The position numbers were made by a program, and so were the translations under genes. Positions 1-27,758 of a stretch of DNA of 64,000 bases are shown one piece after another. The notes under the pieces are model-generated. The model had not been told where the DNA came from, did not search any database, and saw only the letters and a program-made list of their open reading frames with translations. The DNA lies in sequence record PQ330092.1, one strand, 5' to 3'. Each line of letters begins with the position of its first letter. The first letter of the stretch is position 1.

Positions 1-768
1 ACGGAATGTAGTCGTACTTGAACTAAGAAAGTTTGGAGTTTGACCACATACGAAATATGATGTACCATTATAGTAATTTAATGCATTACCACCAATGGCT
101 GCATCGATTACACCAGAACTACGCAATCCCCAAGTGTTAATTTGTGTTTGGTTCCCCGTACCATGCTGCCCACTACTATTCCATCCAGAACTATATAGCT
201 TATTATCTAATGTAAGATACATACTATCATTCGCATTGGTCATTACTTTACGAACGTTCGTAGCACATTGAGTTAATGTATAAATTGATGATGAACCAAT
301 ACCCAAAGAACCACGATATCCATTATCTCCTGCACCATAGAGTACTGAATTAGTGCTAAGTACAAATATTAAACCATTTGTACATACAATATTAGCAATT
401 TCACTTACTGGTATAGCATTGGTAAACCAATTAGTCCTTTCAACTAATACAGTACTGTAAGAAGTAGTCGTAGAAGATGAGAACCAGTACGTTTGACCTG
501 ATGTCCATATAGTATTATCATTTTTAATAATAACAAGTGTACGATCACCCACGAAAAAATTAGAAACATCGGCACTTACTAATATCCATGAAGATACCGT
601 GTTGGTATTACCATTTCCAGATTCACCACCTTGATTTCTACCTATGTAATATAAATCATGTGAATCAGTCAATAAGAATTGACCTTGTGTAGAAGCACCA
701 ACTTTAATTATATTTTTAGGACCAGGTACAATATTTCCGTACTTAACCATTCTTCCAAAAGGTAACAT
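1..768 (-). CDS. RCC1/BLIP-II-like beta-propeller repeat protein, runs off window edge
   Basis: Hand translation from ATG 768 (MLPFGRMVKYGNIVPGP...) is open to base 1. SD AGGAGG. Repeats such as LYGAGDNGYRGSLGIG and LYSSGWNSSGQHGTG. Paralogue of 842..1990. Confidence 0.8.
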   Translation of the reverse strand, partial: MLPFGRMVKYGNIVPGPKNIIKVGASTQGQFLLTDSHDLYYIGRNQGGESGNGNTNTVSSWILVSADVSNFFVGDRTLVIIKNDNTIWTSGQTYWFSSSTTTSYSTVLVERTNWFTNAIPVSEIANIVCTNGLIFVLSTNSVLYGAGDNGYRGSLGIGSSSIYTLTQCATNVRKVMTNANDSMYLTLDNKLYSSGWNSSGQHGTGNQTQINTWGLRSSGVIDAAIGGNALNYYNGTSYFVCGQTPNFLSSSTTTFR

Positions 769-841
769 AAATCCCTCCTTATTCATTATACTATATTTAA
801 TACAAATAAGAAAAGCCAGTATCAAGTACTGGCATATCAAA

Positions 842-1990
842 TCACTGCAAAAATGACATATCGACTTCGGTATAATTAAGAACGTTCTGTCCAGCAATAC
901 CTCCCATTACTACAATTGAAGCCCCACAATAATATAACTTCGAAGTATCAGTAAGTATAAGTGAACCAGATGGGGTGCGTACCAAATTACACGAAGTATT
1001 AAACGAAGTATATGAAGGGGTATAAGAGTACTGATTAATATTATTACCAACACCTAATTGACCAGACGAGTTGCTTCCAGATGCATAAAGTACTTCATCA
1101 CCTTTAACTATATGTGACGCCATGTTACCAACACAAGTATATAAACTATAAACTCCTGAACTCAATAATGTTGGAGTTTTGTATTGTATATCTGTAGATG
1201 AAGAAGTACCACCTGTGCCAAATTCGTTCCCGTATTGTGCACCGAACTGTTTACCACATGCGTACAAATTATTATCTGATTTAATAAAAAATGTACTCTG
1301 ATAACTTACATCAAAATCTATAACATCCGAAGCAATCATCGTCACCCCAGTAATAGAAGTTTGATTACCTGTACCTAACTGATAGTAATAGTTAAAACCA
1401 CAACCCCATAAAGTATTATCTTCTTTTAGGTATATGTTACCAACTGCCTTTTTAACCGAAGTTATAGTATCTACCCTTTTGAATGTGTTAAAAGAATTAA
1501 TGTTTGTACCATCACCAAATGATGATAGGTTAGAGTTATTGTTAGCTCCACAACAATACAATGTACCATCGTTTGTTATCAAATTTACCTTCATATCATT
1601 AAAACTACTCATGTATTTTATATCAGAAACATTAATACCACTGGATGTTATCCACGTAGTACATTCCGTCCACAAAGTTTTTCTATCAGTTACACCAGTG
1701 AATGCCTTCGTGTTACCAGTGATAAAAACTTTTCCAGTACCTTTCTCTTCATACAATTGACAATCACTACTGTTATTTTCCAATAGAACTCGTTTAACAT
1801 TCTCCGCACTAAGAATAAATTTACTCGACGCTACACCAGTTCCAGTACCCCAATTCGTCGCAGAAGATGCATACAACTTATCAGTATAAGTATCATGAAG
1901 ATACATGGAATCACTGGAATATATTTTAAAACGTCCATCATCACCAGGGGCAATATTCCCGTAATTCATCATTCTAACAAAAGGTAACAT
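842..1990 (-). CDS. RCC1/BLIP-II-like beta-propeller repeat protein (382 aa)
   Basis: Start MLPFVRMMNYGNIAP after SD AGGAGG. Repeats LWGCGFNYYYQLGTG, LYACGKQ..EFGTG and LYASGSNSSGQLGVG. Confidence 0.85.
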   Translation of the reverse strand: MLPFVRMMNYGNIAPGDDGRFKIYSSDSMYLHDTYTDKLYASSATNWGTGTGVASSKFILSAENVKRVLLENNSSDCQLYEEKGTGKVFITGNTKAFTGVTDRKTLWTECTTWITSSGINVSDIKYMSSFNDMKVNLITNDGTLYCCGANNNSNLSSFGDGTNINSFNTFKRVDTITSVKKAVGNIYLKEDNTLWGCGFNYYYQLGTGNQTSITGVTMIASDVIDFDVSYQSTFFIKSDNNLYACGKQFGAQYGNEFGTGGTSSSTDIQYKTPTLLSSGVYSLYTCVGNMASHIVKGDEVLYASGSNSSGQLGVGNNINQYSYTPSYTSFNTSCNLVRTPSGSLILTDTSKLYYCGASIVVMGGIAGQNVLNYTEVDMSFLQ

Positions 1991-2038
1991 AAATCCCTCC
2001 TTATTCATTATATCATATTTACCCCATAAAGAAAACCC

Positions 2039-2067
2039 TTGACATCCTTTCAGTACTGGTGTACTAT
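2039..2067 (+). promoter_or_regulatory. sigma70-type promoter for the left small-gene array
   Basis: TTGACA-17-TACTAT upstream of SD AAGGAG and ATG 2093. Confidence 0.7.
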
Positions 2068-2092
2068 AGAAGGAATATAAGGAGAACTACAC

Positions 2093-2320
2093 ATGACAAA
2101 TACTCTTAAGTACTACCTCAATACTCTAAATGAACTAGAGTACGGGGAATTTCTCGCGGATAGTTCGTGGCTAATTGAGCTAAAAAATTATAATAGTCCA
2201 GGATGCACCCTTATGATGAACAATGCAATTGATACCCTCATTGTGAGTATTTTACACAGCAACATCTGCGGGGATAGCAATAAACAATTATCAAAAATCT
2301 TAGTACTGCTATCTATATGA
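2093..2320 (+). CDS. hypothetical, left array (divergent member)
   Basis: ORF with SD; Y-rich start; LLSI* end. Confidence 0.75.
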   Translation: MTNTLKYYLNTLNELEYGEFLADSSWLIELKNYNSPGCTLMMNNAIDTLIVSILHSNICGDSNKQLSKILVLLSI

Positions 2321-2520
2321 ATATCGAACAGTACTACATCGATGCACTACCAACAAAAGGTCTACGTGAAAGCCTACTGCATACACAAACTAATTTCAAA
2401 CACCTCAAACGTAGCCCTAAACTCCTGAACTCGTACAGGAATAATAACATAAGAAATGCTTTACAAGGGGTAGAATGTATGCAATACTATTACATCCTTA
2501 CCCTATTAATCGAGTACTAA
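2317..2520 (+). CDS. hypothetical, left ~60-aa paralogue array
   Basis: ATGA overlap; EQYY start; LLIEY* end. Confidence 0.75.
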   Translation: MNIEQYYIDALPTKGLRESLLHTQTNFKHLKRSPKLLNSYRNNNIRNALQGVECMQYYYILTLLIEY

Positions 2521-2521
2521 T

Positions 2522-2731
2522 ATGAATACTGAACATAAAGAATTCTACACCAAATACCTTAGCAACGAAGAACAATTGTTTCTAAGGAGTGTATCACCTG
2601 TAAGTACCAATACTCAATTCGGTAGAGATTGCTTTAATAATTGTATACGTAGTACTCTAGAAGCAATCGAATGCAATAACAAAAATATTATGTACTCAGG
2701 TTTAATAGGACTAATATATTTCTATGAATAA
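2522..2731 (+). CDS. hypothetical, left array; close paralogue of 6103
   Basis: MNTEHKEFY...FGRDCFNNCI. Confidence 0.8.
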   Translation: MNTEHKEFYTKYLSNEEQLFLRSVSPVSTNTQFGRDCFNNCIRSTLEAIECNNKNIMYSGLIGLIYFYE

Positions 2732-2918
2732 TCATAAAGATTTCTATTGTAGTAAACTACCCAAACAAGAACAGCTATCATTCTCTTTAGCACCACCTAT
2801 GAGAAAGGATAATCTGTATTATAATTACGATTTCAGGATGGTGACACGTTATGCAATAGAACATCAGTTCCCTGAAACTAAGTACCGCTCTATCCTGAAC
2901 CTCATCTTTAAGTTCTAA
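2724..2918 (+). CDS. hypothetical, left array
   Basis: MNNHKDFY...LIFKF*. Confidence 0.75.
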   Translation: MNNHKDFYCSKLPKQEQLSFSLAPPMRKDNLYYNYDFRMVTRYAIEHQFPETKYRSILNLIFKF

Positions 2919-2970
2919 AAGGTACACCAGGGACCGAGTACTTTAATATAGTAAGGCTAATTACATTATA

Positions 2971-3156
2971 ATGAATCATATAAGCTACTACTACCAACAA
3001 CTATCCGACAGAGACAAGTACAGTCACAACTCCCATGTGTGGTACTACAAACGCGGCAGTATAAGAGACAAACAACATTACTTCTGTATTTCTATTAAAG
3101 AAGCACTGACAACTAAGTACACGTACCGAGCAGTACTTAAACTTATTGAAATGTAA
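2971..3156 (+). CDS. hypothetical, left array (YRxVLKLI subfamily)
   Basis: C-terminus KYTYRAVLKLIEM*. Confidence 0.75.
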   Translation: MNHISYYYQQLSDRDKYSHNSHVWYYKRGSIRDKQHYFCISIKEALTTKYTYRAVLKLIEM

Positions 3157-3166
3157 AGAGAATACT

Positions 3167-3349
3167 ATGAACATTGAATTGTACTTAAGTAAATTACAGC
3201 CTGGCGATAGATTCATCTACAATAAGTTCGAATTCAACTACAAGAACGGGAGCAACAAATATCGTCGAGGATACCTATATACAAGCACAAGAGATGCACA
3301 AAACGAAAAGTACACATACAGAGAAGTACTTAAACTAATCTCTATTTGA
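3167..3349 (+). CDS. hypothetical, left array (YRxVLKLI subfamily)
   Basis: MNIELY...AQNEKYTYREVLKLISI*. Confidence 0.75.
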   Translation: MNIELYLSKLQPGDRFIYNKFEFNYKNGSNKYRRGYLYTSTRDAQNEKYTYREVLKLISI

Positions 3350-3357
3350 GGTAATAT

Positions 3358-3543
3358 ATGAATACATTTGAGTACTATACCAATAAACTATCTATGCCTG
3401 AAAGATCTCATCTCTATGTGTGGAGAAATGCGTATAAAAGCGGCAATAAACTTATACAAAGAAATTCCCTTACAGTGTGTACAAATTTAATTAAAGCAGA
3501 GTACCGCACATATATTGAAGTACTCAAACTGATAGCAATATAA
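3358..3543 (+). CDS. hypothetical, left array (YRxVLKLI subfamily)
   Basis: MNTFEYY...YIEVLKLIAI*. Confidence 0.75.
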   Translation: MNTFEYYTNKLSMPERSHLYVWRNAYKSGNKLIQRNSLTVCTNLIKAEYRTYIEVLKLIAI

Positions 3544-3551
3544 GGTACTCT

Positions 3552-3731
3552 ATGCAAGAATTCTATATCTATAACCTCCAGCACAAAGATAGATACAACT
3601 ATAATAAATTCCAAAGGTACTACACAGTCGGGAACAAAAGAGATAAAAAACGTTATCTACTCTCGTGTACAGTAGAAGCACAAAACGAAAAGTACACGTA
3701 CAGAGAAGTACTTAAACTAATCTCAATCTAA
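3552..3731 (+). CDS. hypothetical 59 aa, left array (below ORF-track cutoff)
   Basis: Hand translation MQEFYIYNLQHKDRY...AQNEKYTYREVLKLISI*. Confidence 0.75.
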   Translation: MQEFYIYNLQHKDRYNYNKFQRYYTVGNKRDKKRYLLSCTVEAQNEKYTYREVLKLISI

Positions 3732-3738
3732 GGTAGAC

Positions 3739-3927
3739 ATGAACACTTTTGAGTACTACTTCAATAAACTAAACCACATAGAACAAAGTATGCACCACAC
3801 ATTTATTCAGAACCATCAATCATCTTCACCTCTAATTAAAAACATATCGATTGAGATTATCACTACCCGTGTACAGTCATCTGAACGTTATATGTATATT
3901 GATGTACTGAAACTCATCTCTATGTAA
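3739..3927 (+). CDS. hypothetical, left array (YRxVLKLI subfamily)
   Basis: MNTFEYY...YIDVLKLISM*. Confidence 0.75.
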   Translation: MNTFEYYFNKLNHIEQSMHHTFIQNHQSSSPLIKNISIEIITTRVQSSERYMYIDVLKLISM

Positions 3928-3935
3928 GGAATACT

Positions 3936-4115
3936 ATGCAACAATTCTATAGAGAACACATAAGCATTAAAGACCGTTTCATGTACGACACCTTCGTGAA
4001 GTACTACAAACTAGGAACAAAAAGTACTAAAAATATTAATCTCAATAGCTGCATTTATGCTGTACTAACACAAGATAATCCCTACAGGGAAATCATTGCC
4101 CTGGCATCTATATAA
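3936..4115 (+). CDS. hypothetical 59 aa, left array (below ORF-track cutoff)
   Basis: Hand translation MQQFYREHISIKDRF...PYREIIALASI*; SD AAGGA. Confidence 0.7.
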   Translation: MQQFYREHISIKDRFMYDTFVKYYKLGTKSTKNINLNSCIYAVLTQDNPYREIIALASI

Positions 4116-4125
4116 AGGAAACCAA

Positions 4126-4785
4126 ATGAAACTTAATCCACACAGCAAACAATACCTTAAGCACTTTAAATACCTCAACAGTATTCAAGCAGAATCTTTT
4201 ACACCAGCATATACGTATCACCCAAATGTACTAAAGAAACGAAATAAAAAGAAAAAATCCAGAAATGTTCTCGTATCTAAGAACCTCAAATCGTACTTGA
4301 AGAAAAATAATATAGCTCTTGCTTTTATTAATATCTATAATACTGATTTAAAAGTATTGAGTACTAATACCAGCACAAAAGCACTAAAGAATGCATCTAT
4401 CTATATACACATGGATAATATCCCGTGCACTATAATTCTATCTTTCGGGAATGTATACTTCTTCGGGAATTGTAATAGCACCCATGATATCAGTACTGCA
4501 CAATTCCAAATCGGCGATATGTACTGCATGGGTTCAGAAAAAATACACGATAACATGCACTTCTTCCAAAAGCAACGTACTAACGAAACTGATACAGTAC
4601 TGCAATTCCTAAAAGAACTACAAAACAAAGAATTAACACCAGAAGAAGAATTCATGTACAGTACTGTAATCGATAATCCAGAACTCTATAAAAACGCGTA
4701 CAATCTAACAAAACATGTACAGGAACTTATCAGTACTGATAAGAAATTTCATCACCTCATTACGTATATTTCAAACTATGTATAA
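4126..4785 (+). CDS. hypothetical 219 aa with basic stretch and EEEFMYSTVID motif
   Basis: SD AAGGA before MKLNPHSK; KKRNKKKKSR; C-terminal variant of the EExFQxSLV motif. Confidence 0.8.
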   Translation: MKLNPHSKQYLKHFKYLNSIQAESFTPAYTYHPNVLKKRNKKKKSRNVLVSKNLKSYLKKNNIALAFINIYNTDLKVLSTNTSTKALKNASIYIHMDNIPCTIILSFGNVYFFGNCNSTHDISTAQFQIGDMYCMGSEKIHDNMHFFQKQRTNETDTVLQFLKELQNKELTPEEEFMYSTVIDNPELYKNAYNLTKHVQELISTDKKFHHLITYISNYV

Positions 4786-4960
4786 AGAATACTACAAAGA
4801 TAAAATCCCAATGCATCTACAACACCATATACCAAACGTTGCATTGGGTATCAAAGATCACGCAAAGATAATGTTCCAACAATGTACTAAGTACACGCTC
4901 ATATACGATGATAATCCATATATGCTGTACTACGTAGTAATGCTAACATTCAGGTACTAA
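4778..4960 (+). CDS. hypothetical, left array (HKEYY...RY subfamily)
   Basis: MYKEYY...LTFRY*. Confidence 0.75.
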   Translation: MYKEYYKDKIPMHLQHHIPNVALGIKDHAKIMFQQCTKYTLIYDDNPYMLYYVVMLTFRY

Positions 4961-4961
4961 T

Positions 4962-5141
4962 ATGAATACTTATAAAGAATTCTACCTCTCGTACCTTAAT
5001 TCCGATATAGTAACATCCAATACATTCAGTACTAAAATTATCTATAATGAATTAATGAAAGAATGTATTAAAGGTGCTATTAACCCTAAAGATACGTATG
5101 ACTTGTACTATGCAGTACTAACCCTTGTTTTCACGAAATAA
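4962..5141 (+). CDS. hypothetical 59 aa, left array (below ORF-track cutoff)
   Basis: Hand translation MNTYKEFYLSY...YYAVLTLVFTK*. Confidence 0.7.
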   Translation: MNTYKEFYLSYLNSDIVTSNTFSTKIIYNELMKECIKGAINPKDTYDLYYAVLTLVFTK

Positions 5142-5149
5142 CACATAAT

Positions 5150-5341
5150 ATGAATAACCACAAAGAATACTACATAGAGAAACTCCCAATGTATCTCCAA
5201 CACCTTGTACCAACAGTACCATTGGGTATAGAAAAAAACTACGAAAAAGACTACTTCATTCAGTGCACTAAATCCTCGATATATATTGAAGACTATAATC
5301 GAGTACTGTATCACATCCTTTTACTAATATATAGGTACTAA
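5150..5341 (+). CDS. hypothetical, left array
   Basis: MNNHKEYY...LIYRY*. Confidence 0.8.
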   Translation: MNNHKEYYIEKLPMYLQHLVPTVPLGIEKNYEKDYFIQCTKSSIYIEDYNRVLYHILLLIYRY

Positions 5342-5342
5342 T

Positions 5343-5525
5343 ATGCACAAAGAATACTACACACAATTTCTCCCCAGCATTTTTGAACACTACGCCAGAT
5401 ACAAAGTCCCTATGGATAACGATTTGGCAGTACTGGGATTCAATAACTGCATAGAACGAAGTATAGAAAATAGTAGTAGTTATGACCAGCTATATAACAC
5501 TATCCTACTTATATTCAGGTACTAA
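5343..5525 (+). CDS. hypothetical, left array
   Basis: MHKEYY...LIFRY*. Confidence 0.8.
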   Translation: MHKEYYTQFLPSIFEHYARYKVPMDNDLAVLGFNNCIERSIENSSSYDQLYNTILLIFRY

Positions 5526-5526
5526 T

Positions 5527-5715
5527 ATGCATAAAGAATACTACACAAAATATTTCCCAATGTACCTCAGTACTAATCTATTAGATAAACCTCGCGGTAT
5601 CAATGCACAAAACGATAAAGTGTACTTTACTATGTGCACTAAAGCATGTATACTAGATCATGACAGCTACCATCGAGTACTGTATCATACCCTGTACCTA
5701 GCTTTCGTATTCTAA
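5527..5715 (+). CDS. hypothetical, left array
   Basis: MHKEYYTKYFP start after AGGTACTAAT. Confidence 0.8.
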   Translation: MHKEYYTKYFPMYLSTNLLDKPRGINAQNDKVYFTMCTKACILDHDSYHRVLYHTLYLAFVF

Positions 5716-5724
5716 GAGAACAAT

Positions 5725-5910
5725 ATGCATAAAGAATTCTACTTAAGCCATCTCGATCTAAACTCCCAAATGCTTATACCACTAATCCCAATAGATATCA
5801 AGGATAAGAAAAATACCGAACAATTCATTTACCATACACAGTGTGCGATCACCCCAAATTACATTCCATATGAATTGTACTACATTATCGCCCTAATATA
5901 TAGGTACTAA
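5725..5910 (+). CDS. hypothetical, left array
   Basis: MHKEFY...LIYRY*. Confidence 0.8.
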   Translation: MHKEFYLSHLDLNSQMLIPLIPIDIKDKKNTEQFIYHTQCAITPNYIPYELYYIIALIYRY

Positions 5911-5911
5911 T

Positions 5912-6097
5912 ATGCATAGAGAATACTACACACAATTTGTTAAAGGGAACTACAAATGTGCCGTACCCAGAACCCCTTTAAATTCTCATGACCCAAGTAC
6001 TATATTCTTGTTTAATGACGCAATACGTACAGTACTCAATACTAAAGATGAAGATGTGCAGTACGTATTCTTACTATTACTTATATACAGACACTAA
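5912..6097 (+). CDS. hypothetical, left array
   Basis: MHREYY...LIYRH*. Confidence 0.8.
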   Translation: MHREYYTQFVKGNYKCAVPRTPLNSHDPSTIFLFNDAIRTVLNTKDEDVQYVFLLLLIYRH

Positions 6098-6102
6098 CTA
6101 AT

Positions 6103-6312
6103 ATGAATAAAGAACATAAAGAATTCTACTCCAAATACATAAGCCCCTCAGAACAAATGTTTCTAAGGACTACTCCACCTTTAAGTACTAATACATTTTT
6201 CGGCAGAGTATGCTACAATAATTGTATTCAAATGACTTTAAACGCAAATGAAGATGGTAACAGTACTAACCTGTACTCAGGTATCATAGGTATACTATTC
6301 CTGTATGAATAA
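6103..6312 (+). CDS. hypothetical, left array; close paralogue of 2522
   Basis: MNKEHKEFY...FGRVCYNNCI. Confidence 0.8.
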   Translation: MNKEHKEFYSKYISPSEQMFLRTTPPLSTNTFFGRVCYNNCIQMTLNANEDGNSTNLYSGIIGILFLYE

Positions 6313-6493
6313 TTACAAAGACTTCTATTTGAATACACTACCTACTGTACTTTCTCTAAGTGCTCAATGTAAAATCCCGCTGGATAATGCTTACGCCAGA
6401 TATAGCTATTCCATAACTGTTAATCGATGTATAGAGAATCATTGCAGTACTAACCAGTACTATAACATAATCCTACTTATATTCAGGTACTAA
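6305..6493 (+). CDS. hypothetical, left array
   Basis: MNNYKDFY...LIFRY*. Confidence 0.8.
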   Translation: MNNYKDFYLNTLPTVLSLSAQCKIPLDNAYARYSYSITVNRCIENHCSTNQYYNIILLIFRY

Positions 6494-6494
6494 T

Positions 6495-6677
6495 ATGAAT
6501 ACTGAACATAAAGAATTCTATATACGAAAACTAACATTCGTCCCCGTAAGAATATATAAAGAATGCGACCCAAGATTATACCTATGGCACTTCAATGAGT
6601 GCATAAAAGATTCTATATACCATAAGAACTATAAAGAACAATTGTGCTCAGTACTAACACTAGTACTATCATATTAA
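6495..6677 (+). CDS. hypothetical, left array
   Basis: MNTEHKEFY...FNECI. Confidence 0.8.
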   Translation: MNTEHKEFYIRKLTFVPVRIYKECDPRLYLWHFNECIKDSIYHKNYKEQLCSVLTLVLSY

Positions 6678-6692
6678 TTAATAGAGAATACT

Positions 6693-6884
6693 ATGTATAA
6701 AAACTTCTATATAAGTAAACTAAAAGAAAATGAACAAGTATGGATTAGATCTATAATTCCACTGGCATTTAATAGATATGCATTTAACAGATGTACCGAG
6801 ATTGCTATAGACCCTTATAATATCAAAGAGAATGTACAGTATAATCAGTACTACTATATCTTAATGCTTATATATAGGAAGTAA
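6693..6884 (+). CDS. hypothetical, left array
   Basis: MYKNFY...FNRC...LIYRK*. Confidence 0.75.
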   Translation: MYKNFYISKLKENEQVWIRSIIPLAFNRYAFNRCTEIAIDPYNIKENVQYNQYYYILMLIYRK

Positions 6885-6901
6885 TTAAACACAAGTAGAC
6901 A

Positions 6902-6986
6902 GGGGAAGCTCCTAGTGAACAACCTTTATGTACAGGCGAATTGTTAAAATTCAGCCTGGACAAATGCGATCACTAGGATTCTCCCC
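6902..6986. ncRNA. candidate rod-shaped structured RNA/ssDNA hairpin
   Basis: GGGGAAGCTCCTAGTGA (6902-6918) pairs with TCACTAGGATTCTCCCC (6970-6986); inner stem TGTACAGGC-GAATT / AATTC-A-GCCTGGACA; no ORF. Confidence 0.45.
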
Positions 6987-7284
6987 AGGCTAAACCCAGT
7001 AATCATAGGTAGTCATAAGTAATCATATATAAACATTTATATGAGCACCGTAGAATCACAGAATGATTATATATGATTCAGTACTGATTAGTATAGACAA
7101 GAATGCTCAAGAATGCACGGGAAGGATTCAGTACTGATATGCCACTAAGTAGGCAGAGGAAGTCTGCCGTACTTTGTAGTTTCCAAGCTCCTTTTCCATT
7201 TTGCAAATTACATCAAATGTAATCAAAAGTAATCACGCAATGATTAGTACTGAATTATTACTTTCACCTTAATTACAATTACCC

Positions 7285-7304
7285 TTTTACCCTTCGGGGT
7301 AAAA
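7285..7304. terminator. perfect hairpin TTTTACCC-TTCG-GGGTAAAA (UUCG tetraloop)
   Basis: 8-bp stem seen directly; possible terminator or end signal. Confidence 0.5.
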
Positions 7305-7512
7305 TTCAATTACCCCTTGAGGCTCCAGCAAAAAGTTGGTTAGTACTCCATCCTAAATCTCGATCCTAAAAATTTTGGAGTACCTATGAAATAAAAGTTG
7401 GATCTTCGAAAGTTGAAATTTACGTTGGGACGTTTATGATTTGTGGGATATAATGATGTTTGTAGACGGGTAGTTCTCAAGAATATCAGTACTGAATGGT
7501 GAAAGAAAGTTA

Positions 7513-7540
7513 TTGACATTATGATTCAGTACTGTATAAT
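7513..7540 (+). promoter_or_regulatory. first clear sigma70 promoter in the DTR
   Basis: TTGACA-16-TATAAT (consensus boxes). Confidence 0.85.
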
Positions 7541-7547
7541 GTTCTAC

Positions 7548-7644
7548 ATAGAGAGATGAGTTGCTGCGAACAATTCATTTACTCTACCTCCTGTCGTGAG
7601 ACAGTACAGAAAAGATAGTTCCTCCTGTGGTGGTACATCTTTTT
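7548..7644 (+). ncRNA. candidate sRNA, three hairpins, two CCUCCUGU anti-SD-like motifs
   Basis: Downstream of a consensus promoter with no ORF. ~15-bp 5' stem, CTGTC-GTGA-GACAG GNRA hairpin, AAAAGAT/ATCTTTT stem with T-run. Confidence 0.6.
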
Positions 7645-7724
7645 GAACCTCATATGAAAATTGTAATAACAGTACTGATATTAACAGAATGGTGTCAGTA
7701 CTGATTTTAATCTAAAGCATTATG

Positions 7725-7744
7725 CCACCAGCACAAGCTGGTGG
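7725..7744. other. inverted pair of Chi sites CCACCAGC-acaa-GCTGGTGG
   Basis: Exact E. coli Chi octamer on both strands. Confidence 0.8.
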
Positions 7745-7942
7745 ATTCCCTCTAACAGTATTCAGTACTACATGATAGTCTTCATCCTCCTAGGGTAACA
7801 TAGTGAGGGCTATGATGGCAGTACTGAATACTCCCTTTCAAAAGATAGATCTATGGTATAGTACTGACGGATTTTGGGTGTAGTTACCCTGGATGGATTT
7901 TGGACGTAGATATGTCTAGCCCTCCAGAAGTCTGGAAGTAAA

Positions 7943-8056
7943 GATGGCTATCCATCTAGACGGCTAAACGGCTAGATTTCTGGATGGCTGGATGGCTAGA
8001 CGTTTGGACGGCTAAACGGCTAGATGGTTACACGTCTGGAAGTATAGACGGCTAAA
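7943..8056 (+). repeat. cluster of ~9 short repeats (G/A)A(C/T)GG(C/T)T(A/G)
   Basis: GACGGCTAAACGGCTAGA twice plus GATGGCT variants; non-coding. Confidence 0.75.
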
Positions 8057-8236
8057 TCAAAATTTTATTTTGTTTTTCCAATAGTTCCCCTACCGCGTGG
8101 GGATAGTTTCCCCGCAGTATCTGTAGTTAGATTTTTCTGAATCTGGAATCATTATCTTATAAACTGGGGGCAATGTCAACGACCTGGCCGGATATTTTTA
8201 AAAATTTTTTCAGTACTGAATTTTGGGCGTAACTAT

Positions 8237-8465
8237 GCACCCGGTGGGCTTGAGTCTTTCTCGACTTGATGGAACTATTATACAGTACTGGAAAAATAAA
8301 GCAATACCCTGGATGAAAAAAGTTTTAATTAATTTGCTTGCCATCCTGGGCCGGACTATGGTACTATATTTCAGTACTGAGAAAGTGCGTTTACCTGCTA
8401 GGGTGCGGGAGTGTATCCTTTTTTTATATCTTGAATTTTGGGCGTAATTCCGCACCCTCTGGGGT
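8237..8465. promoter_or_regulatory. three CCC-Ann-GGGTGC elements with minus-strand promoters
   Basis: Motifs at 8237-8250(-), 8393-8406(+, degenerate) and 8452-8465(-). Minus-strand TTGCTT-16-TATAAT and TTGACT-16-TATAAT upstream. Confidence 0.6.
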
Positions 8466-8671
8466 TTCCGCTTTCTCGCGTCTATGTAGTAATTATACGC
8501 TTTTTCAGGATCAAGTCAATACCTAAAAACAAAATAATTGAAAATAATTTAACGCGTTTAAACGGCCTGTAAAGCCCTGGAATGATTGGAATGGTGCAAA
8601 TGTATAGCTTATGTGTATTAATGCGTTAGAATGCGTCTGAGGCCGTTTTATGGGGTGTAGTAGTGATTTGG

Positions 8672-8764
8672 TTGATTCAGTACTGAATAATAGTACTCCT
8701 ATATAGAAAGATAGTTCCCCTGGATTGATTCAGTACTGAATAATAGTACTCCTATATAGAAAGA
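8672..8764 (+). repeat. 40-bp exact direct repeat (8672-8711, 8725-8764)
   Basis: TTGATTCAGTACTGAATAATAGTACTCCTATATAGAAAGA x2. Confidence 0.9.
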
Positions 8765-8795
8765 AAACTATTTTAAAAGTATTTGTAGAAAGTAC

Positions 8796-8856
8796 TTGCA
8801 CCGTACTGATAAAAGCGTATAATGTTTTACATCGAGAGCGGGAACACTTCCCGCTA
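8796..8856 (+). promoter_or_regulatory. prototype promoter/stem-loop cassette head (~45 promoters per DTR, many with the hairpin)
   Basis: AAAGTAC-TTGCAC-16-TATAAT-GTTTTAC-ATCGAGA-GCGGGAA-cac-TTCCCGC. Variants at 9256, 9936, 11299, 11554, 13622, 13959, 15544, 15774, 16360, 16795, 19524, 21105, 23650, 23955, 24503, 24839, 25479, 26347 and others (approximate positions). Confidence 0.9.
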
Positions 8857-8878
8857 CACATTAAGAGAGATTAAAACG

Positions 8879-9241
8879 ATGGCGACTCAAATCAATAAAA
8901 TCATGCTTAACCTGGTAAACTTCCGCGAAGAGATGAAAGGTCTTCCGGCTGAAACTGTAAAAATTCACATTGCAGCTTATCGGGAACTTATTGCAATGTT
9001 GCCGCTTAAGCGTGAACAATACGCCGCTACTTTGATGCTTGATTCAATGATCCATATAATGATCTCAAATGATTTAACGATGGTTTATCAGTACATGGGC
9101 GAAAATTTCGCGGTGTGTAGTAAGCCAGTACCAGGGATGGCAACTACTGAGGAATTGCACGGTTTAAATTTAAAGCAAGATGCATGGGATAATATGCCTC
9201 GTTTCCTGGTATGGGCTGACAGTGGCAAAATTTACAAATAA
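8879..9241 (+). CDS. hypothetical early protein
   Basis: Own promoter/hairpin; MATQINK start. Confidence 0.8.
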   Translation: MATQINKIMLNLVNFREEMKGLPAETVKIHIAAYRELIAMLPLKREQYAATLMLDSMIHIMISNDLTMVYQYMGENFAVCSKPVPGMATTEELHGLNLKQDAWDNMPRFLVWADSGKIYK

Positions 9242-9333
9242 GTTTAATAAAGTACTTGCAAACTAAGTTTAAAAGCGTATAATGTTTTACATCAGGTGGG
9301 GAATAGTTCCCCACTATATAAGAGGATTAAAAA

Positions 9334-9573
9334 ATGGCTAAATCAAAAATGTTCTTAGGTCACAAAAACAAAACTCATTGGAATGTAAGCCTTTGGATTA
9401 ATAACGATGAATCATTATACCGGTTGGCCCAGGACTTTATTAACGATAGCACTAATCGCAATGATGCGGCCCGTCATATGATGTTATTTTTAGAACAGAC
9501 TGGACAAGATAAAACACCGGACGGATTCAAATATAGCACTACTGCGATCCGTGCGGCGATGGTTGGAATGTAA
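9334..9573 (+). CDS. conserved phage hypothetical (WNVSLWINNDE...TPDG type)
   Basis: Own promoter, SD GAGGA; motif recalled from phage hypothetical proteins. Confidence 0.8.
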   Translation: MAKSKMFLGHKNKTHWNVSLWINNDESLYRLAQDFINDSTNRNDAARHMMLFLEQTGQDKTPDGFKYSTTAIRAAMVGM

Positions 9574-9928: not shown

Positions 9929-10015
9929 AAAGTACTTGCAAACTATGTTTAAAGGCGTATAATGTTTTACATCGAGAGCGGGAACTCTTCCCGCCTATAA
10001 CCTGGAGTAATAAAA

Positions 10016-10450: not shown

Positions 10451-10531
10451 ACTTTTTTTTTACTATTCAGTACTGAAAACTATTTTTAAAAAGTACTTGC
10501 AAACTATGTTTAAAGGCGTATAATGTTTTAC

Positions 10532-10606
10532 ATCAGGACGGGGAACGAAATAAGTAACTTCCCGTTAAGTAGCCCAGGAGTAAGGCACACGAAAAACTCC
10601 CCTGAT
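10532..10606 (+). ncRNA. candidate pseudoknot ncRNA, copy A
   Basis: Own promoter, no ORF. ATCAGG/CCTGAT closing stem; core TAAGTAGCCCAGGAGTAAGGCACACGAAAAACTCC. Confidence 0.7.
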
Positions 10607-13505: not shown

Positions 13506-13575
13506 CCACCAGCACCGCCTAGAATCGATTCTAACGCATTAAACTGATTATCTGATACATCGCCCTAGCTGGTGG
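13506..13575. other. Chi sites 13506-13513(-) and 13568-13575(+) around 14-bp palindrome TAGAATCGATTCTA
   Basis: Seen directly; intergenic. Confidence 0.75.
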
Positions 13576-13723
13576 CGTTAAGGTCGTTAGAATGCGATTG
13601 AGAGCGTTTAAAGTATTTTGCAAAAAGTAATAAAAAGTACTTGCACGATAAAGAGATTAGCGTATAATGTTTTACATCGAGAGGGGGAAACGGTTCTCCT
13701 TCCAAATCAAAGGAATCAAAACA

Positions 13724-15343: not shown

Positions 15344-15553
15344 ATGCTTACTGTACAGGATAAGATCGACATCTTAAAGGTTAATATGTATGTGATTGAT
15401 GCCGTACCTGGTAAAGTATTTGCATACGATGACACCACTGTAAGCGATTTCTACTATAGCCAGGACGTGGGGGATCTTTCTGTACAGTCGGTTATTGAAA
15501 ACGTAGTTAATGCAGCGTATGAGCATTTACTTTCAAATAGTACTTGCAATTAG
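15344..15553 (+). CDS. hypothetical early protein
   Basis: ORF track; SD AAGGT. Confidence 0.75.
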   Translation: MLTVQDKIDILKVNMYVIDAVPGKVFAYDDTTVSDFYYSQDVGDLSVQSVIENVVNAAYEHLLSNSTCN

Positions 15554-15622
15554 TTTTTAAACGCGTATAATGTTTTACATGAAGGGGAGAAATAGTACTC
15601 CCCACTAATTAAGGAATAGTAA

Positions 15623-15769
15623 ATGAAAGCATCAAAAAAGAGTACTAACAAGAAAGCACGTTCACCTTTCGCTGGGGTATTCCCTTTACGTTTCGTTGAT
15701 GAAGTAGTTTCCTACCCGCCGGGCCTTACTCCTGAGATGGTAGAAAGTTTGCGTAAATCTAAAAAATAA
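15623..15769 (+). CDS. hypothetical 48-aa basic protein (below cutoff)
   Basis: Own promoter/hairpin, SD AAGGA; MKASKKSTNKKARSPF. Confidence 0.7.
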   Translation: MKASKKSTNKKARSPFAGVFPLRFVDEVVSYPPGLTPEMVESLRKSKK

Positions 15770-15850
15770 TACTTGCAATTAGTTTTCAGTACTGTATAAT
15801 GTTTTACATCAAGGGGAGAAATGATTCTCCCCACTATCAGGAGAAACAAA

Positions 15851-16318: not shown

Positions 16319-16438
16319 TGTATAAGTATTGAGTACTGAAAACTATTTTTAAAAAGTACTTGCAAACTATCTCAATAGGCGTATAATGTTTTACATCGAA
16401 AGGGGAAACGGTTTCCCCTGGTAATAAGGAAACAAATC

Positions 16439-16780
16439 ATGACTATTGCAATTGCTCAATCTAACTTTGAAAATGAAATCATCGCTCAGACACTGCGTTT
16501 AAGTGATGGTCGGGCCGAAATTAATTACGGTTTCAATTCAGGCGGTTGTGAAAAATATCAGTACTTTGTAACGGCTGATGGCGGTGTCCTGGGTATCAAT
16601 ACAGTTATTGTAAACATCCAAAAAATTAATTTCAATGATCCAGACGATAGCCAGTTTTACATCACAGGCGTAGACGTGAACTATGAGGATGACTCACTAA
16701 CTGATGATCACACTGGCGAGCGGTTAGAAAGTGCATACGGTGAAGATGATTATCAGTCCGGTCCAGAAGATTTCGAATAA
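16439..16780 (+). CDS. conserved phage hypothetical, acidic (YFVTADGG...VNYED...ESAY)
   Basis: Own promoter/hairpin, SD AAGGA. Confidence 0.85.
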   Translation: MTIAIAQSNFENEIIAQTLRLSDGRAEINYGFNSGGCEKYQYFVTADGGVLGINTVIVNIQKINFNDPDDSQFYITGVDVNYEDDSLTDDHTGERLESAYGEDDYQSGPEDFE

Positions 16781-17592: not shown

Positions 17593-17620
17593 AGCCCACT
17601 GGTTAACGCTGGTGGGCTTT
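17593..17620 (+). terminator. terminator-like hairpin containing a Chi site (17608-17615)
   Basis: AGCCCACTGG-ttaa-CGCTGGTGGGCTTT. Confidence 0.6.
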
Positions 17621-17691
17621 AATTCATCACCCTATACAATGCCAGTACTCAACCGTTTATCTCGTTAGAATGCGTTACAGGACGTTTAACA

Positions 17692-17889
17692 ATGATTAGC
17701 ATGAAATCAGTACAAAAACAAATAGAAACATTATCAAAAATTAAACGTAAACAGTACTCCTTAGAATATACAATCAATGGTAACTATCATCTAATGAAAG
17801 AGAATAATTTTATAGTCATTGATGAATCATTGCAAATCATTAGTATAGTACTGAAAGCATTAATCAATGACAGAAAAAAATTAAAATAA
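17692..17889 (+). CDS. hypothetical 65 aa
   Basis: ORF track; no clear own promoter. Confidence 0.55.
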   Translation: MISMKSVQKQIETLSKIKRKQYSLEYTINGNYHLMKENNFIVIDESLQIISIVLKALINDRKKLK

Positions 17890-17892
17890 TCT

Positions 17893-17975
17893 ATTGACAA
17901 TATCATCCAGTACTGGCATAATACTTACATCAAGACGAGAACGTCACTAACCCATAGGGTGCACAAATGTAACTG
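17893..17975 (+). promoter_or_regulatory. ORF-less unit with AACCCATAGGGTGC (17949-17962)
   Basis: TTGACA-17-CATAAT, hairpin GACG-agaa-CGTC, motif, TGTAACTGT. Confidence 0.7.
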
Positions 17976-18220
17976 TATAATATTGATCAAAAAATGATCT
18001 GATCAATACTTGATCAATTTGCGTAAAGTAGTATAATTCTATGCAGTTGGTTAGACGAAAGGTTATGATTAGTAGTGCAAGTGTATAAAAATTTTCATGG
18101 TGTATCGTTCCGCACATATGGCAATGAATATGTGGTATCATGTGGATTGGAAAAAGTAAGAACAAGTAATATTATTGTCGCATTACAGTACTATAGTATT
18201 TTTATAATGAGGTTAAAATA

Positions 18221-18478
18221 ATGGCTGTAGGATACGCGAAAGATGGGGCCGAGCAAGACGAGATTAACGCAGTGATTCAGGCCGCCGTTAACCACGCTAG
18301 AAAGCAAATTAACGCACAAATAGAATCACTGATACATTGCCTCGACTGCGGCGATAAAATCCCTGAGAATCGACGCCAGGCCGTTATAGGGTGCATGTAT
18401 TGTATTACTTGCCAGGAGGATCATGATAGTACTTTTAAAAGAGATCCGCGTAATTGTTGGCATAGATCTATGAGATAA
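18221..18478 (+). CDS. TraR/DksA-family C4 zinc-finger protein (YbiI-like)
   Basis: CLDCGDKIPENRRQAVIGCMYCITCQE matches CxxCGxxIPxxRRxAxPGxxxCxxCQ; N-terminus MAVGYAKD resembles YbiI MASGWAND. Confidence 0.85.
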   Translation: MAVGYAKDGAEQDEINAVIQAAVNHARKQINAQIESLIHCLDCGDKIPENRRQAVIGCMYCITCQEDHDSTFKRDPRNCWHRSMR

Positions 18479-18542
18479 AAAGTAATTGACAGTACTGAAA
18501 GATAGTGTATAATGTTTTATATCTTAACTGAGGATAGTAATC

Positions 18543-19166: not shown

Positions 19167-19193
19167 TATTAATTTAATAGAGGATAACAATAA

Positions 19194-27203: not shown

Positions 27204-27661
27204 GAAATAAAAGGGATTGGACTATGGCAAAATGCGTAGGGGGCTAAAGGGCGGGTAACCTAGTAGGCAGAGGAAGTCTGCCGTACTTTGTAGTTTCCAA
27301 GCTCCTTTTCCATTTTGCAAATTACATCAAATGTAATCAAAAGTAATCACGCAATGATTAGTACTGAATTATTACTTTCACCTTAATTACAATTACCCTT
27401 TTACCCTTCGGGGTAAAATTCAATTACCCCTTGAGGCTCCAGCAAAAAGTTGGTTAGTACTCCATCCTAAATCTCGATCCTAAAAATTTTGGAGTACCTA
27501 TGAAATAAAAGTTGGATCTTCGAAAGTTGAAATTTACGTTGGGACGTTTATGATTTGTGGGATATAATGATGTTTGTAGACGGGTAGTTCTCAAGAATAT
27601 CAGTACTGAATGGTGAAAGAAAGTTATTGACATTATGATTCAGTACTGTATAATGTTCTAC

Positions 27662-27758
27662 ATAGAGAGATGAGTTGCTGCGAACAATTCATTTACTCTA
27701 CCTCCTGTCGTGAGACAGTACAGAAAAGATAGTTCCTCCTGTGGTGGTACATCTTTTT
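27662..27758 (+). ncRNA. copy of anti-SD-like sRNA candidate
   Basis: 7548+20114. Confidence 0.6.

What the first reader, a model, noticed from the sequence alone, without database searches (positions are those of the whole stretch)
7513..7644. First DTR transcript looks like an sRNA carrying two anti-Shine-Dalgarno motifs
Seen: consensus TTGACA-16-TATAAT, then ~97 nt with no ORF folding into three hairpins (15-bp 5' stem, GNRA-capped CTGTC/GACAG, terminal AAAAGAT/ATCTTTT plus T-run). CCTCCTGT occurs twice (7587-7594, 7621-7628), and the first reads ACCTCCT. Established: the 16S rRNA 3' tail is ACCUCCUUA. Inference: an immediately expressed phage RNA that mimics the anti-SD and occludes strong AGGAGG-type ribosome-binding sites, or pairs with CAGGA-rich RNAs such as CsrB/C. 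I know of no description of it.
Basis: partly seen in the sequence, partly recalled or inferred. Interest (0 to 1): 0.7.

Follow-up and report, generated by a model that had tools for sequence, protein, structure and literature searches.

The report
Conserved early small RNA of jumbo coliphages
About 400 bases from the left end of an Asteriusvirus jumbo coliphage genome, a perfect host-type promoter drives a roughly 100-base, three-hairpin non-coding RNA that is kept across the genus and not described anywhere I could search; its proposed role as a mimic of the ribosome's anti-Shine-Dalgarno tail is possible but untested.

Summary
The window is an Asteriusvirus jumbo coliphage (PBECO4/121Q/G17 group). 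It holds two tandem copies of the ~20.1 kb direct terminal repeat (DTR), so the locus occurs twice: 7513-7644 and 27627-27758.

A 12/12 sigma-70 consensus promoter lies 365 bp inside the physical left end. The RNA behind it folds into three hairpins, a fold kept in all 11 distinct relatives. 93% of pair cells are paired against ~45% when the partners are slid, and 10 of 34 pairs show compensatory changes. G:U pairs place it on the + strand. The small ORFs on either strand are not conserved.

Rfam has no match, and none of 34 Asteriusvirus papers describes it.

The anti-SD reading is only partly supported:
- CCUCCU #2 is invariant, but it is base-paired to an invariant GGUGG.
- CCUCCU #1 exposes only about 4 nt and is lost in 2 of 11 lineages.
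- The U-run after hairpin 3 decays in four relatives.
- No conserved complementary target exists in the phage genomes.
- Transcript ends could not be seen.

One unexpected lead: the invariant hairpin 2 matches 13 nt of 23S rRNA helix 93.

Verdict: a real new phage RNA family with an open mechanism.

The parts
7513..7540 (+). Sigma-70 consensus promoter: -35 TTGACA at 7513-7518, 16-nt spacer holding the CAGTACTG palindrome (7527-7534), -10 TATAAT at 7535-7540. Predicted start at A7546 or A7548.
   Evidence: 12/12 match. Invariant in 11 relatives. Shares the -10 and the initial transcribed sequence TATAATGTT(C/T)TACAT(A/C)GAG with about 15 other early promoters of the DTR. The start site is an inference.
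7549..7586 (+). Hairpin 1: 5'-terminal stem of 15 pairs with one bulge and a 7-nt loop.
   Evidence: MFE fold. 6 of its 15 pairs show changes on both sides across relatives, e.g. GAGUUG/CAAUUC becomes GGGAAC/GUUCCU or GAAAUC/GAUUUU.
7586..7592 (+). Motif 1, ACCUCCU, identical to 16S rRNA 1535-1541. ACCUC is an unpaired linker and the last CU opens hairpin 2.
   Evidence: Unpaired probabilities are 0.9-1.0 for CCUC and under 0.1 for the last CU. Kept in 9 of 11 distinct sequences; UAUCAU in Turkey5 and JNE01. 16S 3' end read from K-12 rrsH.
7591..7604 (+). Hairpin 2: CUGUC-GUGA-GACAG, a GNRA tetraloop. The core GUCGUGAGACA is invariant.
   Evidence: Invariant in 11 relatives, except that the closing C-G becomes A-U in two (compensatory). 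7593-7605 equals E. coli 23S rRNA 2592-2604.
7609..7644 (+). Hairpin 3: base helix GAAAAGAU/AUCUUUUU around an inner CC-U-CC / GG-U-GG helix. This is motif 2 (CCUCCU, 7621-7626) paired with GGUGG (7629-7633) and a conserved U.U mismatch. The U-run is 7640-7644. It has weak terminator-like architecture.
   Evidence: CCUCC and GGUGG are invariant in all 11, while loop length varies from 3 to 13 nt. The base helix covaries (GU to CG, AU to GC). The U-run is lost in 4 relatives.
7670..7712 (+). Inverted repeat of two CAGTACTG palindromes followed by ATTTTAAT. A second terminator-like site and a possible alternative 3' end at about 165 nt.
   Evidence: Terminator-like site listed. About 91% conserved across divergent relatives.
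7725..7744 (.). Hairpin made of two opposed Chi octamers (CCACCAGC-ACAA-GCTGGTGG), 577 bp from the left end. Annotated as a terminator in phage G17.
   Evidence: The loop is flipped (ACAA/TTGT) among relatives.
27627..27758 (+). Identical second copy of promoter plus RNA in the second tandem DTR copy (offset 20114).
   Evidence: model R1 hit at 27660-27764, 128.9 bits.

Best explanation
This is a genus-specific, non-coding, three-hairpin RNA of Asteriusvirus jumbo phages. Host RNA polymerase transcribes it from a perfect sigma-70 promoter 365 bp inside the physical left end. Because it lies in the DTR it is present twice per packaged genome.

It is built on the same frame as the phage's early mRNAs: the same -10 and initial transcribed sequence, then a 5' hairpin. 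Where those mRNAs carry their Shine-Dalgarno sequence and ORF, it carries ACCUCCU, an invariant GUGA hairpin, and a second CCUCCU held in a deliberately imperfect helix with GGUGG.

The RNA and its fold are shown. The rest is inferred. The likeliest mechanism is a stable, abundant trans-acting RNA of about 100 nt (up to about 165-200 nt where the U-run is weak). Its C-rich motifs would pair with purine-rich ribosome-binding sites of the (C)AGGAG(G) type and block initiation. The phage's own genes use mostly 4-nt SDs, so strong-SD host mRNAs, or the subset of phage mRNAs with CAGGAG, would be hit preferentially.

My odds are about 0.85 that it is a functional RNA, about 0.65 that it is a separate small RNA rather than a leader, and about 0.3 that it acts by anti-SD-type pairing.
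For: - Genome identity and position.
- Promoter 12/12 and invariant.
- Three hairpins recur in independent MFE folds of divergent relatives.
- RNAalifold on an unfitted MAFFT alignment gives 22 pairs, 7 of them compensatory.
- On the model-fitted alignment 93.2% of cells are paired against 44-50% when slid. 10 of 34 pairs change on both sides (shuffles average 4.7 +/- 1.4; 1 of 500 reach 10).
- G:U is the commonest pair at 4 positions, and the + strand folds better than the - strand in 10 of 11 sequences.
- One copy per DTR and no paralogues.
- The first gene (about 8879) has its own promoter at 8796-8823, so this unit is not needed as its leader.
- CCUCCU #2 is invariant in 11/11 and #1 kept in 9/11; the U.U mismatch in CCUCC/GGUGG is kept everywhere, although CCACC would pair perfectly.
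- Of 133 ORFs in the window, none has AGGAGG and 2 have GGAGG. 7 of the 15 AGGAG-type SDs read CAGGAG, which complements CUCCUG.
- E. coli K-12 has about 50 more CAGGAGG-N3-10-ATG sites than the control pattern.
- A related jumbo phage, PA5oct, has highly transcribed ncRNAs in its DTR: PMC7318152.
Against: - No direct evidence of the transcript, its ends or its timing. Only metatranscriptome contigs were available, and they also cover DNA upstream of the promoter.
- Motif 2 is fully paired and motif 1 offers about 4 free nt.
- Motif 1 is absent in Turkey5 and JNE01.
- The U-run is only 5 nt and decays to UUU, UCUU or UU in four relatives, so this is a weak terminator and a poor Hfq-type 3' end.
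- No conserved ACAGGAGG target exists in five phage genomes.
- Six-base complementarity to SDs is generic.
- The conserved GGTGG may be constrained as DNA, since it is a perfect Chi site in JNE01 and EJP2.
- Fold z-scores are unremarkable in A4, Turkey5 and G17.
- Only 11 distinct sequences were available, and the alignment used for the counts was fitted to the structure.
Confidence: 0.3

Rival explanations
1. rRNA-fragment mimic or protein decoy. The RNA displays copies of two functional rRNA pieces side by side: ACCUCCU (the 16S 3' tail) and GUCGUGAGACAGU (the 23S helix 93 apex with its GUGA loop and A2602). It would titrate a protein that normally binds them. Candidates are a ribosome-assembly or modification factor, or an rRNA-directed nuclease of a defence or toxin system. 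It would not pair with mRNAs.
For: - A 13-nt identity to 23S 2592-2604. The 13-mer occurs 7 times in K-12, only in the seven rrl genes and in sense orientation.
- Only 11 of 2000 shuffles of the RNA share a 13-mer or longer with sense rRNAs.
- The identical part is exactly the invariant part of the RNA.
- ACCUCCU equals the 16S 3' tail.
- Era's KH domain binds GAUCA plus CCUCC next to a tetraloop hairpin (PMC10582724).
- Sequence invariance of paired stems is more typical of protein recognition than of a simple helix.
Against: - The rRNA comparison was post hoc.
- Two short GNRA hairpins can coincide by chance.
- The GAUCA element that Era needs is absent.
- A2602 is bulged in 23S but paired here.
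- Motif 1 is lost in two lineages.
- No protein partner was tested, and no literature links helix 93 to phage.
Confidence: 0.15
2. The act of transcription, or a cis role, is what matters. Options are a promoter-proximal antitermination element (put/nut-like); a transcript that activates or primes the neighbouring origin-like iteron and AT-rich region; or a strong end-proximal promoter whose RNA is stopped at once by three successive hairpins to insulate that region. In each case the free RNA has no trans target.
For: - The hairpins start at +4 from a strong promoter.
- The U-run is not conserved, so read-through is likely in some relatives.
- Iteron-like repeats at 7945-8060 and an AT-rich stretch follow, with convergent minus-strand promoters at 8179-8151 and 8519-8492.
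- The whole 1.7 kb non-coding terminus is conserved, and 8085-8660 more so than the RNA itself.
- The GNRA-capped 5-bp hairpin resembles boxB in form.
Against: - Covariation shows selection on RNA pairing in all three hairpins, including the base of hairpin 3 where the U-run is lost.
- Three terminator-like hairpins follow within 200 nt.
- The next gene has its own promoter.
- No put, nut or other Rfam match.
- No N-like protein was identified (not searched).
Confidence: 0.2
3. A DNA-level element. The conserved CCTCCT, GGTGG and CAGTAC-like words are protein or RecBCD (Chi-like) sites in the terminal control region, and the RNA fold is incidental.
For: - GGTGG is part of a perfect Chi site in JNE01 and EJP2.
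- ATAGTTCCYC, which overlaps motif 2, recurs 25 times in the window against 6.3 expected.
- The 3' arm of hairpin 2 is a one-mismatch CAGTACTG, and a perfect one in metagenome variant L037.
Against: - There are compensatory changes and G:U pairs specific to the + strand.
- Most ATAGTTCCYC copies are the loop and 3' arm of the 5' hairpins of early mRNAs, so they are RNA features too.
- In most genomes hairpin 3 is not a Chi site.
Confidence: 0.1
4. A decayed early transcription unit: promoter and 5' hairpin of a lost gene, with no present function. Or a tiny protein gene: the 20-aa ORF at 7556-7618 (+), or the 19-aa minus-strand ORF behind AGGAGG-N8-ATG.
For: - It shares the promoter, initial transcribed sequence and 5' hairpin frame of early genes.
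- Fragments of that frame are scattered in the non-coding terminus.
- Short ORFs exist in the window.
Against: - It is kept in all 37 or more Asteriusvirus records, with covariation.
- The + ORF is frameshifted in A4 and has no start in EJP2. The GTG-started frames in Turkey5 and JNE01 give unrelated peptides.
- The minus-strand ORF has no start in A4 or EJP2, and in Turkey5 and JNE01 its AGGAGG is gone. The only other start there is a TTG behind the motif-2 AGGAGG, with an unrelated frame.
- The + ORF has no spaced SD.
Confidence: 0.07

Closest known systems
Base-pairing sRNAs with C-rich, anti-SD-like seeds (Staphylococcus aureus RsaE and RNAIII, Bacillus subtilis RoxS); from my own knowledge
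   Same: A small non-coding RNA with repeated C-rich motifs complementary to GGAGG-type ribosome-binding sites. It has its own promoter and a terminal hairpin.
   Different: In those RNAs the UCCC/CCUCC motifs sit exposed in hairpin loops or linkers. Here one motif is a 4-5 nt linker and the other lies inside a helix. There is no sequence or Rfam relation, it is phage-encoded in a Gram-negative host, and targets are unknown.
ncRNA001 and ncRNA002 in the DTR of Pseudomonas jumbo phage PA5oct (PMC7318152)
   Same: ORF-free, highly transcribed regions inside the long DTR of a jumbo phage that its authors relate to 121Q and PBECO4. That phage also depends on host RNA polymerase.
   Different: They are 236-451 nt, were described there as lacking known promoters, and resemble nothing but the close isolate MIJ3 in sequence. 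I did not fetch PA5oct to compare. Their functions are equally unknown.
phi29 pRNA (packaging RNA); from my own knowledge
   Same: A structured non-coding RNA made from the first early promoter at the left end of a linear phage genome.
   Different: There is no match to any Rfam model, the fold is different, and this is a myovirus of a different phage group, so no packaging RNA is expected. No intermolecular loop-loop design is evident.
Lambda nut boxB and HK022 put RNAs; from my own knowledge
   Same: Promoter-proximal stem-loops. Hairpin 2 is a 5-bp stem with a GNRA loop, like a boxB fold.
   Different: No boxA, no N-like protein identified, no Rfam hit. It is followed directly by terminator-like hairpins and not by a long operon that depends on it.
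E. coli rRNA segments: 16S 3' tail (1535-1541) and 23S helix 93 (2592-2604)
   Same: Identity over 7 nt and 13 nt, lying adjacent in the RNA. The hairpin identity includes the GUGA loop and the 3-bp apex.
   Different: The order and context are unlike rRNA, A2602 is paired here, and the comparison was post hoc (p about 0.005 against shuffles).

Membership tests
Any Rfam 15 family | Covariance-model score at or near the family's gathering threshold | tested here: not met
   window 6500-9500, E up to 10. The only hits are chance snoRNA or miRNA models, all far below their gathering scores (best 25.6 bits against 50) with E of 0.95 or more. None covers the RNA as a whole.
Hfq-type trans-acting sRNA of enterobacteria | Own promoter and no conserved ORF | tested here: met
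   12/12 promoter. The ORFs are not conserved.
Hfq-type trans-acting sRNA of enterobacteria | Rho-independent terminator with a long U tail (about 6-7 U or more) as the 3' end | tested here: inconclusive
   Five U in the window lineage, four of them pairable with the A-tract. UUU, UCUU or UU in A4, Turkey5, JNE01 and EJP2. The simple scan does not list it as a terminator.
Hfq-type trans-acting sRNA of enterobacteria | Conserved single-stranded seed | tested here: inconclusive
   Motif 1 has 4 nt unpaired and is lost in 2 of 11. Motif 2 is invariant but paired.
Hfq-type trans-acting sRNA of enterobacteria | Binding to Hfq or ProQ and identified mRNA targets | not testable with these tools
   Needs RIL-seq, CLIP or EMSA. 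In silico, five phage genomes hold no conserved 8-nt target, and K-12 has only generic SD complementarity.
   ACCUCCU equals 16S 1535-1541. CCUCCU #2 is in 11/11 and #1 in 9/11.
   The conserved U.U mismatch in CCUCC/GGUGG would let a true GGAGG displace the internal partner; that is an inference and is not shown.
phi29-type pRNA | pRNA fold and a phi29-type packaging motor | tested here: not met
   No Rfam hit of any kind. Only the left-end position with an early promoter is shared.
put/nut processive antitermination RNA | Two-stem put fold, or boxA plus boxB with a cognate N protein, acting on downstream terminators | tested here: inconclusive
   No Rfam hit. A GNRA hairpin is present. I did not search for boxA or an N-like gene, and function is not testable here.

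The most novel reading that the evidence does not exclude
As soon as its DNA enters the cell, a virulent jumbo phage floods it with a small RNA that copies functional pieces of the host ribosome's RNAs: the 16S anti-SD tail and the 23S helix 93 apex. By that mimicry it either occupies strong Shine-Dalgarno sites or titrates a factor that binds those rRNA pieces, such as an assembly GTPase like Era or an rRNA-directed defence nuclease. Translation would then shift towards the phage's own weak-SD mRNAs.
Probability: 0.12. Interest if true: 0.85.

Novelty: new member of a known kind. Interest (0 to 1): 0.5.

Why it matters
Asteriusvirus phages are popular therapy candidates, yet about 80% of their genes, and all of their non-coding DNA, have no assigned function. 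No transcriptome for the genus turned up in the searched library.

This locus is a concrete, testable candidate for the first RNA the phage makes. It has a consensus host promoter, two copies per packaged genome, and lies about 400 bp from the left end. Lytic-phage small RNAs with known mechanisms are very few.

If the C-rich motifs do act on ribosome-binding sites, or on proteins that bind rRNA tails, this would be a new route of host take-over by RNA mimicry. Even if not, the RNA defines a new family restricted to one genus. It also marks a dense terminal control region (Chi cluster, palindromic operator-like sites, iterons) that would repay study.

Tried and rejected
- **Rfam**, permissive search of 6500-9500: nothing.
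- **IMG/VR scan** for the invariant hairpin: 21 hits, of which only 121Q is a true homologue.
- **Metagenome scan** for promoter plus hairpin: 6 hits, 2 true and both UE-S1-like.
- **Salmonella phage 7t3:** it shares only the promoter, in front of an ordinary gene. Model R1 gives E of about 1 there.
- **Paralogues** of the RNA in five whole genomes: none beyond one per DTR.
- **Small ORFs** on both strands: rejected, because frame or start is not conserved.
- **RNA evidence:**
  - Two run searches found the stretch in contigs of 7 runs recorded as RNA (wastewater, soil, others).
Those contigs also cover 7318-7512, upstream of the promoter, so they say nothing about transcription or transcript ends. 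I count this as no evidence either way.
- **Target scans with RNAduplex in the window:**
  - The best hits were about -21 kcal/mol, with no control showing significance.
  - The full-length scan gave meaningless long-loop duplexes, and one run timed out.
  - In one search my script replaced the masked N run by A so that the routine would run. The hits touching it (about 63000-63060) were discarded, and nothing there was looked up or filled.
- **ACAGGAGG in five phage genomes:** only the locus's own antisense plus 0-2 scattered, non-conserved sites.
- **No whole genome** is held for this window.
- **Literature:** no transcriptome or sRNA for the genus, nothing on a phage sRNA with an anti-SD motif, nothing on helix 93 and phage.
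- **Era-decoy idea:** the GAUCA element Era needs is absent, so I keep it only as a low-probability variant.

Full report
**Where the window lies.** The 601 bases around the finding match 44 phage records. 37 of them match nearly full length, and all of those are Asteriusvirus jumbo coliphages or Salmonella phages of the PBECO4/121Q/G17 group. SHEFM2K and JP4 are 100% identical.

Records that begin at the experimentally assigned physical end place window position 7300 at base 153. One of them annotates bases 1-21525 as direct terminal repeats, and PhageTerm plus restriction mapping support repeats of about 21 kb in fEgEco12 (PMC13070987). A self-comparison shows two identical tandem copies of the repeat in the window, 7148-27261 and 27262-47375. 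The left physical end is therefore about 7148. The promoter lies 365 bp inside it, and the whole locus recurs at 27627-27758.

**The observation.**
- A 12/12 TTGACA-16-TATAAT promoter at 7513-7540.
- A 105-nt stretch that folds into three hairpins at -30.9 kcal/mol, z = -3.3.
- CCTCCTGT at 7587 and at 7621, the first as ACCTCCT.

CCTCCT is expected about once per 10 kb per strand, so two copies in 40 nt, plus a third at 7786, are more than chance.

Three corrections apply.
- A 20-codon ORF (7556-7618) and short minus-strand ORFs exist.
- Four of the five T's belong to the stem of hairpin 3.
- Motif 2 is paired, not free.

**Is it a real RNA element?** I collected ten Asteriusvirus relatives and one metagenome variant, with identity in this region down to about 70%.
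- The promoter is invariant.
- Independent MFE folds of A4, Turkey5, EJP2, UE-S1 and G17 give the same three hairpins although the sequences differ.
- RNAalifold on a plain MAFFT alignment finds 22 pairs, 7 with compensatory changes.
- I built a covariance model from six close sequences. It finds one copy per DTR in every genome and aligns the divergent ones.
- On that alignment 93.2% of pair cells are standard pairs, against 44-50% when partners are slid by 1-3 columns.
- 10 of 34 pairs change on both sides; shuffles average 4.7 +/- 1.4 and 1 of 500 reach 10.

The caveats are that there are only 11 distinct sequences and that the alignment was fitted to the model.

G:U is the commonest pair at four positions, and the + strand folds better than its complement in 10 of 11 cases. 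That fits an RNA read from the + strand rather than a symmetric DNA element.

The + strand ORF is frameshifted in A4 and has no start in EJP2. The GTG-started frames in Turkey5 and JNE01 give unrelated peptides. The minus-strand ORF behind AGGAGG-N8-ATG has no start in A4 or EJP2, and in Turkey5 and JNE01 its AGGAGG is gone. Coding is rejected.

**What is conserved.** Hairpin 1 is conserved as structure, not sequence: 6 of its 15 pairs covary. Hairpin 2 is conserved as sequence. GUCGUGAGACA is invariant, and the closing C-G is swapped to A-U in two genomes.

In hairpin 3 the base helix covaries, the loop varies from 3 to 13 nt, and both CCUCC(U) and GGUGG are invariant. So is the U.U mismatch between them, although CCACC would pair perfectly.

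Motif 1 is replaced by UAUCAU in Turkey5 and JNE01. The U-run after hairpin 3 (UUUUU in the window lineage) becomes UUU, UCUU or UU in A4, Turkey5, JNE01 and EJP2, yet the helix at its base is kept by compensatory change. Selection therefore acts on the helix and on the C-rich and G-rich words, not on termination at that exact place.

Two further terminator-like hairpins follow: the CAGTACTG inverted repeat at 7670-7703, and a GC-rich hairpin at 7725-7744 that G17's annotators called a terminator. The RNA may be about 100, 165 or 200 nt long.

**Context.** The DTR's early promoters are highly stereotyped. Each has AGTACTTGCA, a 17-nt spacer, TATAATGTTTTACAT(C/A)GAG, then a 5' hairpin of the GGGGAA..UUCCCC type, then an SD and ATG. 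The locus uses the same -10, the same initial transcribed sequence and a 5' hairpin. Where the mRNAs carry their SD, it carries the complement of an SD.

The first protein gene of the DTR (about 8879) has its own promoter of this type at 8796-8823, so the RNA is not needed as its leader.

The surrounding 1.7 kb (7148-8822) is non-coding in all relatives and strongly conserved. The stretch 8085-8660 is more conserved than the RNA itself.

**Testing the anti-SD idea.** Points in favour:
- Identity to the 16S tail is confirmed and the motif is conserved.
- The imperfect internal partner (GGUGG) would be displaced by a true GGAGG; this is an inference.
- The phage's own 133 ORFs in the window use mostly 4-nt SDs. 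None has AGGAGG and 2 have GGAGG. 7 of the 15 AGGAG-type sites read CAGGAG, complementary to the CUCCUG present in both motifs.
- E. coli K-12 has 72 CAGGAGG-N3-10-ATG sites against 19 for the control pattern.

Points against:
- Accessibility is poor.
- Motif 1 is lost in two lineages.
- Five phage genomes hold no conserved ACAGGAGG target.
- Six-base SD complementarity is generic.
- The 3' end is not a good Hfq-type terminator.

The CsrB/C suggestion has nothing in the sequence to support it.

**An unexpected lead.** While listing K-12 sites, I found that the invariant part of hairpin 2 (7593-7605, GUCGUGAGACAGU) is identical to 23S rRNA 2592-2604. That is the apex of helix 93, with its GUGA loop and A2602. 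The 13-mer occurs only in the seven rrl genes of K-12. It lies directly after ACCUCCU, the 16S tail.

Only 11 of 2000 shuffles of the RNA share a 13-mer or longer with sense rRNAs. The test was post hoc, and two short GNRA hairpins can coincide.

Even so, it gives a rival reading: a decoy for proteins that bind these rRNA pieces. Era binds GAUCA plus CCUCC next to a tetraloop hairpin (PMC10582724), but GAUCA is missing here.

**Expression.** No infection transcriptome of this genus was found. The stretch is present in contigs of seven runs recorded as RNA. The contigs I could lay also cover DNA upstream of the promoter, and the depth pattern equally fits 2x DTR DNA. That is no evidence either way.

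**Comparison with known systems.** There is no Rfam family and no description in the searchable literature.
- In kind, it is closest to trans-acting sRNAs with C-rich anti-SD-like motifs (RsaE, RNAIII; my own knowledge).
- By position, it is closest to the highly transcribed DTR ncRNAs of jumbo phage PA5oct (PMC7318152).
- phi29 pRNA shares only the left-end, first-promoter position.
- put and nut share only promoter-proximal hairpins.

**Verdict.** This is a genuine, genus-wide, structured non-coding RNA unit behind the first consensus promoter of the DTR, and I found no prior description of it.

I put it at about 0.3, the decoy reading at about 0.15, and cis or transcription-level roles at about 0.2. 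The novelty class is a new member (a new family) of a known kind, phage-encoded small RNA. Interest is 0.5.

Noticed in passing
window 7148-27261 and 27262-47375: The window holds two identical tandem copies of the ~20.1 kb direct terminal repeat, a concatemer-junction-like layout, flanked by right-end unique DNA (1-7147) and left-side unique DNA (47376 onward). Every DTR feature therefore appears twice, at offset 20114.
   Followed up: yes
window 7725-7744, 13506-13575, 17608-25900 (and the copies at +20114): The E. coli Chi octamer GCTGGTGG occurs 20 times in the window against 0.64 expected, and all copies are inside the DTR. Each DTR copy has 8 on the + strand, the orientation that should stop RecBCD entering at the right end, with the nearest about 1.4 kb from that end. 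It has 2 on the - strand, correct for the left end, with the nearest 577 bp from it. The 7725-7744 pair forms a hairpin of two opposed Chi sites. Whole genomes of relatives carry 23-45 Chi sites against 3-6 for the reversed control, concentrated in the DTR. This looks like end protection against RecBCD.
   Followed up: partly
window, 77 sites, e.g. 7487, 7527, 7670, 7696, 7819, 8211, 8283, 8372: The palindrome CAGTACTG occurs 77 times against about 1 expected. It lies in the spacer of early promoters, abutting the -10, and also stands alone as (T)TCAGTACTGA(A), mostly in the DTR and the right-end region. It looks like an operator for a dimeric regulator of early transcription.
   Followed up: partly
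window 7945-8060 and 8085-8660: Iteron-like repeats of the CTAGACGGCTAAACGGCTAGA type are followed by an AT-rich stretch. After that comes about 600 bp of non-coding DNA that stays 90-100% identical even in relatives only about 70-80% identical elsewhere. That stretch holds two minus-strand near-consensus promoters (8179-8151 and 8519-8492) and a repeated unit AATTTTGGGCGTAA..GCACCC. It could be an origin, a packaging region or further ncRNAs.
   Followed up: partly
window 8796-8860, 9256-9330, 9936-10010, 13640-13720, 15545-15850, 16360-16440, 23650-23730, 24505-24585, 25480-25560, 26350-26430: The early transcription units are stereotyped. Each has AGTACTTGCA, a 17-nt spacer, TATAATGTTTTACAT(C/A)GAG, then a 5' hairpin GGGGAA-loop-UUCCCC, then an SD and ATG. 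The recurrent word ATAGTTCCYC (25 copies against 6.3 expected) is mostly the loop and 3' arm of these 5' hairpins.
   Followed up: partly
window 10530-10605 and 20411-20486 (weaker 12838): Paralogous structured segments of about 75 nt lie directly behind early promoters. Each pairs an internal CCAGGAG with CUCCCCUG and is followed by a second TTGACA promoter. They could be long leaders or further small RNAs. Fold z-scores are only -1.4 to -1.6.
   Followed up: partly
window 7593-7605: A 13-nt identity of the invariant hairpin 2 with E. coli 23S rRNA 2592-2604 (helix 93 apex), next to the 16S-tail heptamer ACCUCCU.
   Followed up: partly
window about 63030-63085: A run of 55 N (masked or a gap). 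It was left alone. One local folding script substituted A so that it could run, and the hits touching the run were discarded.
   Followed up: no
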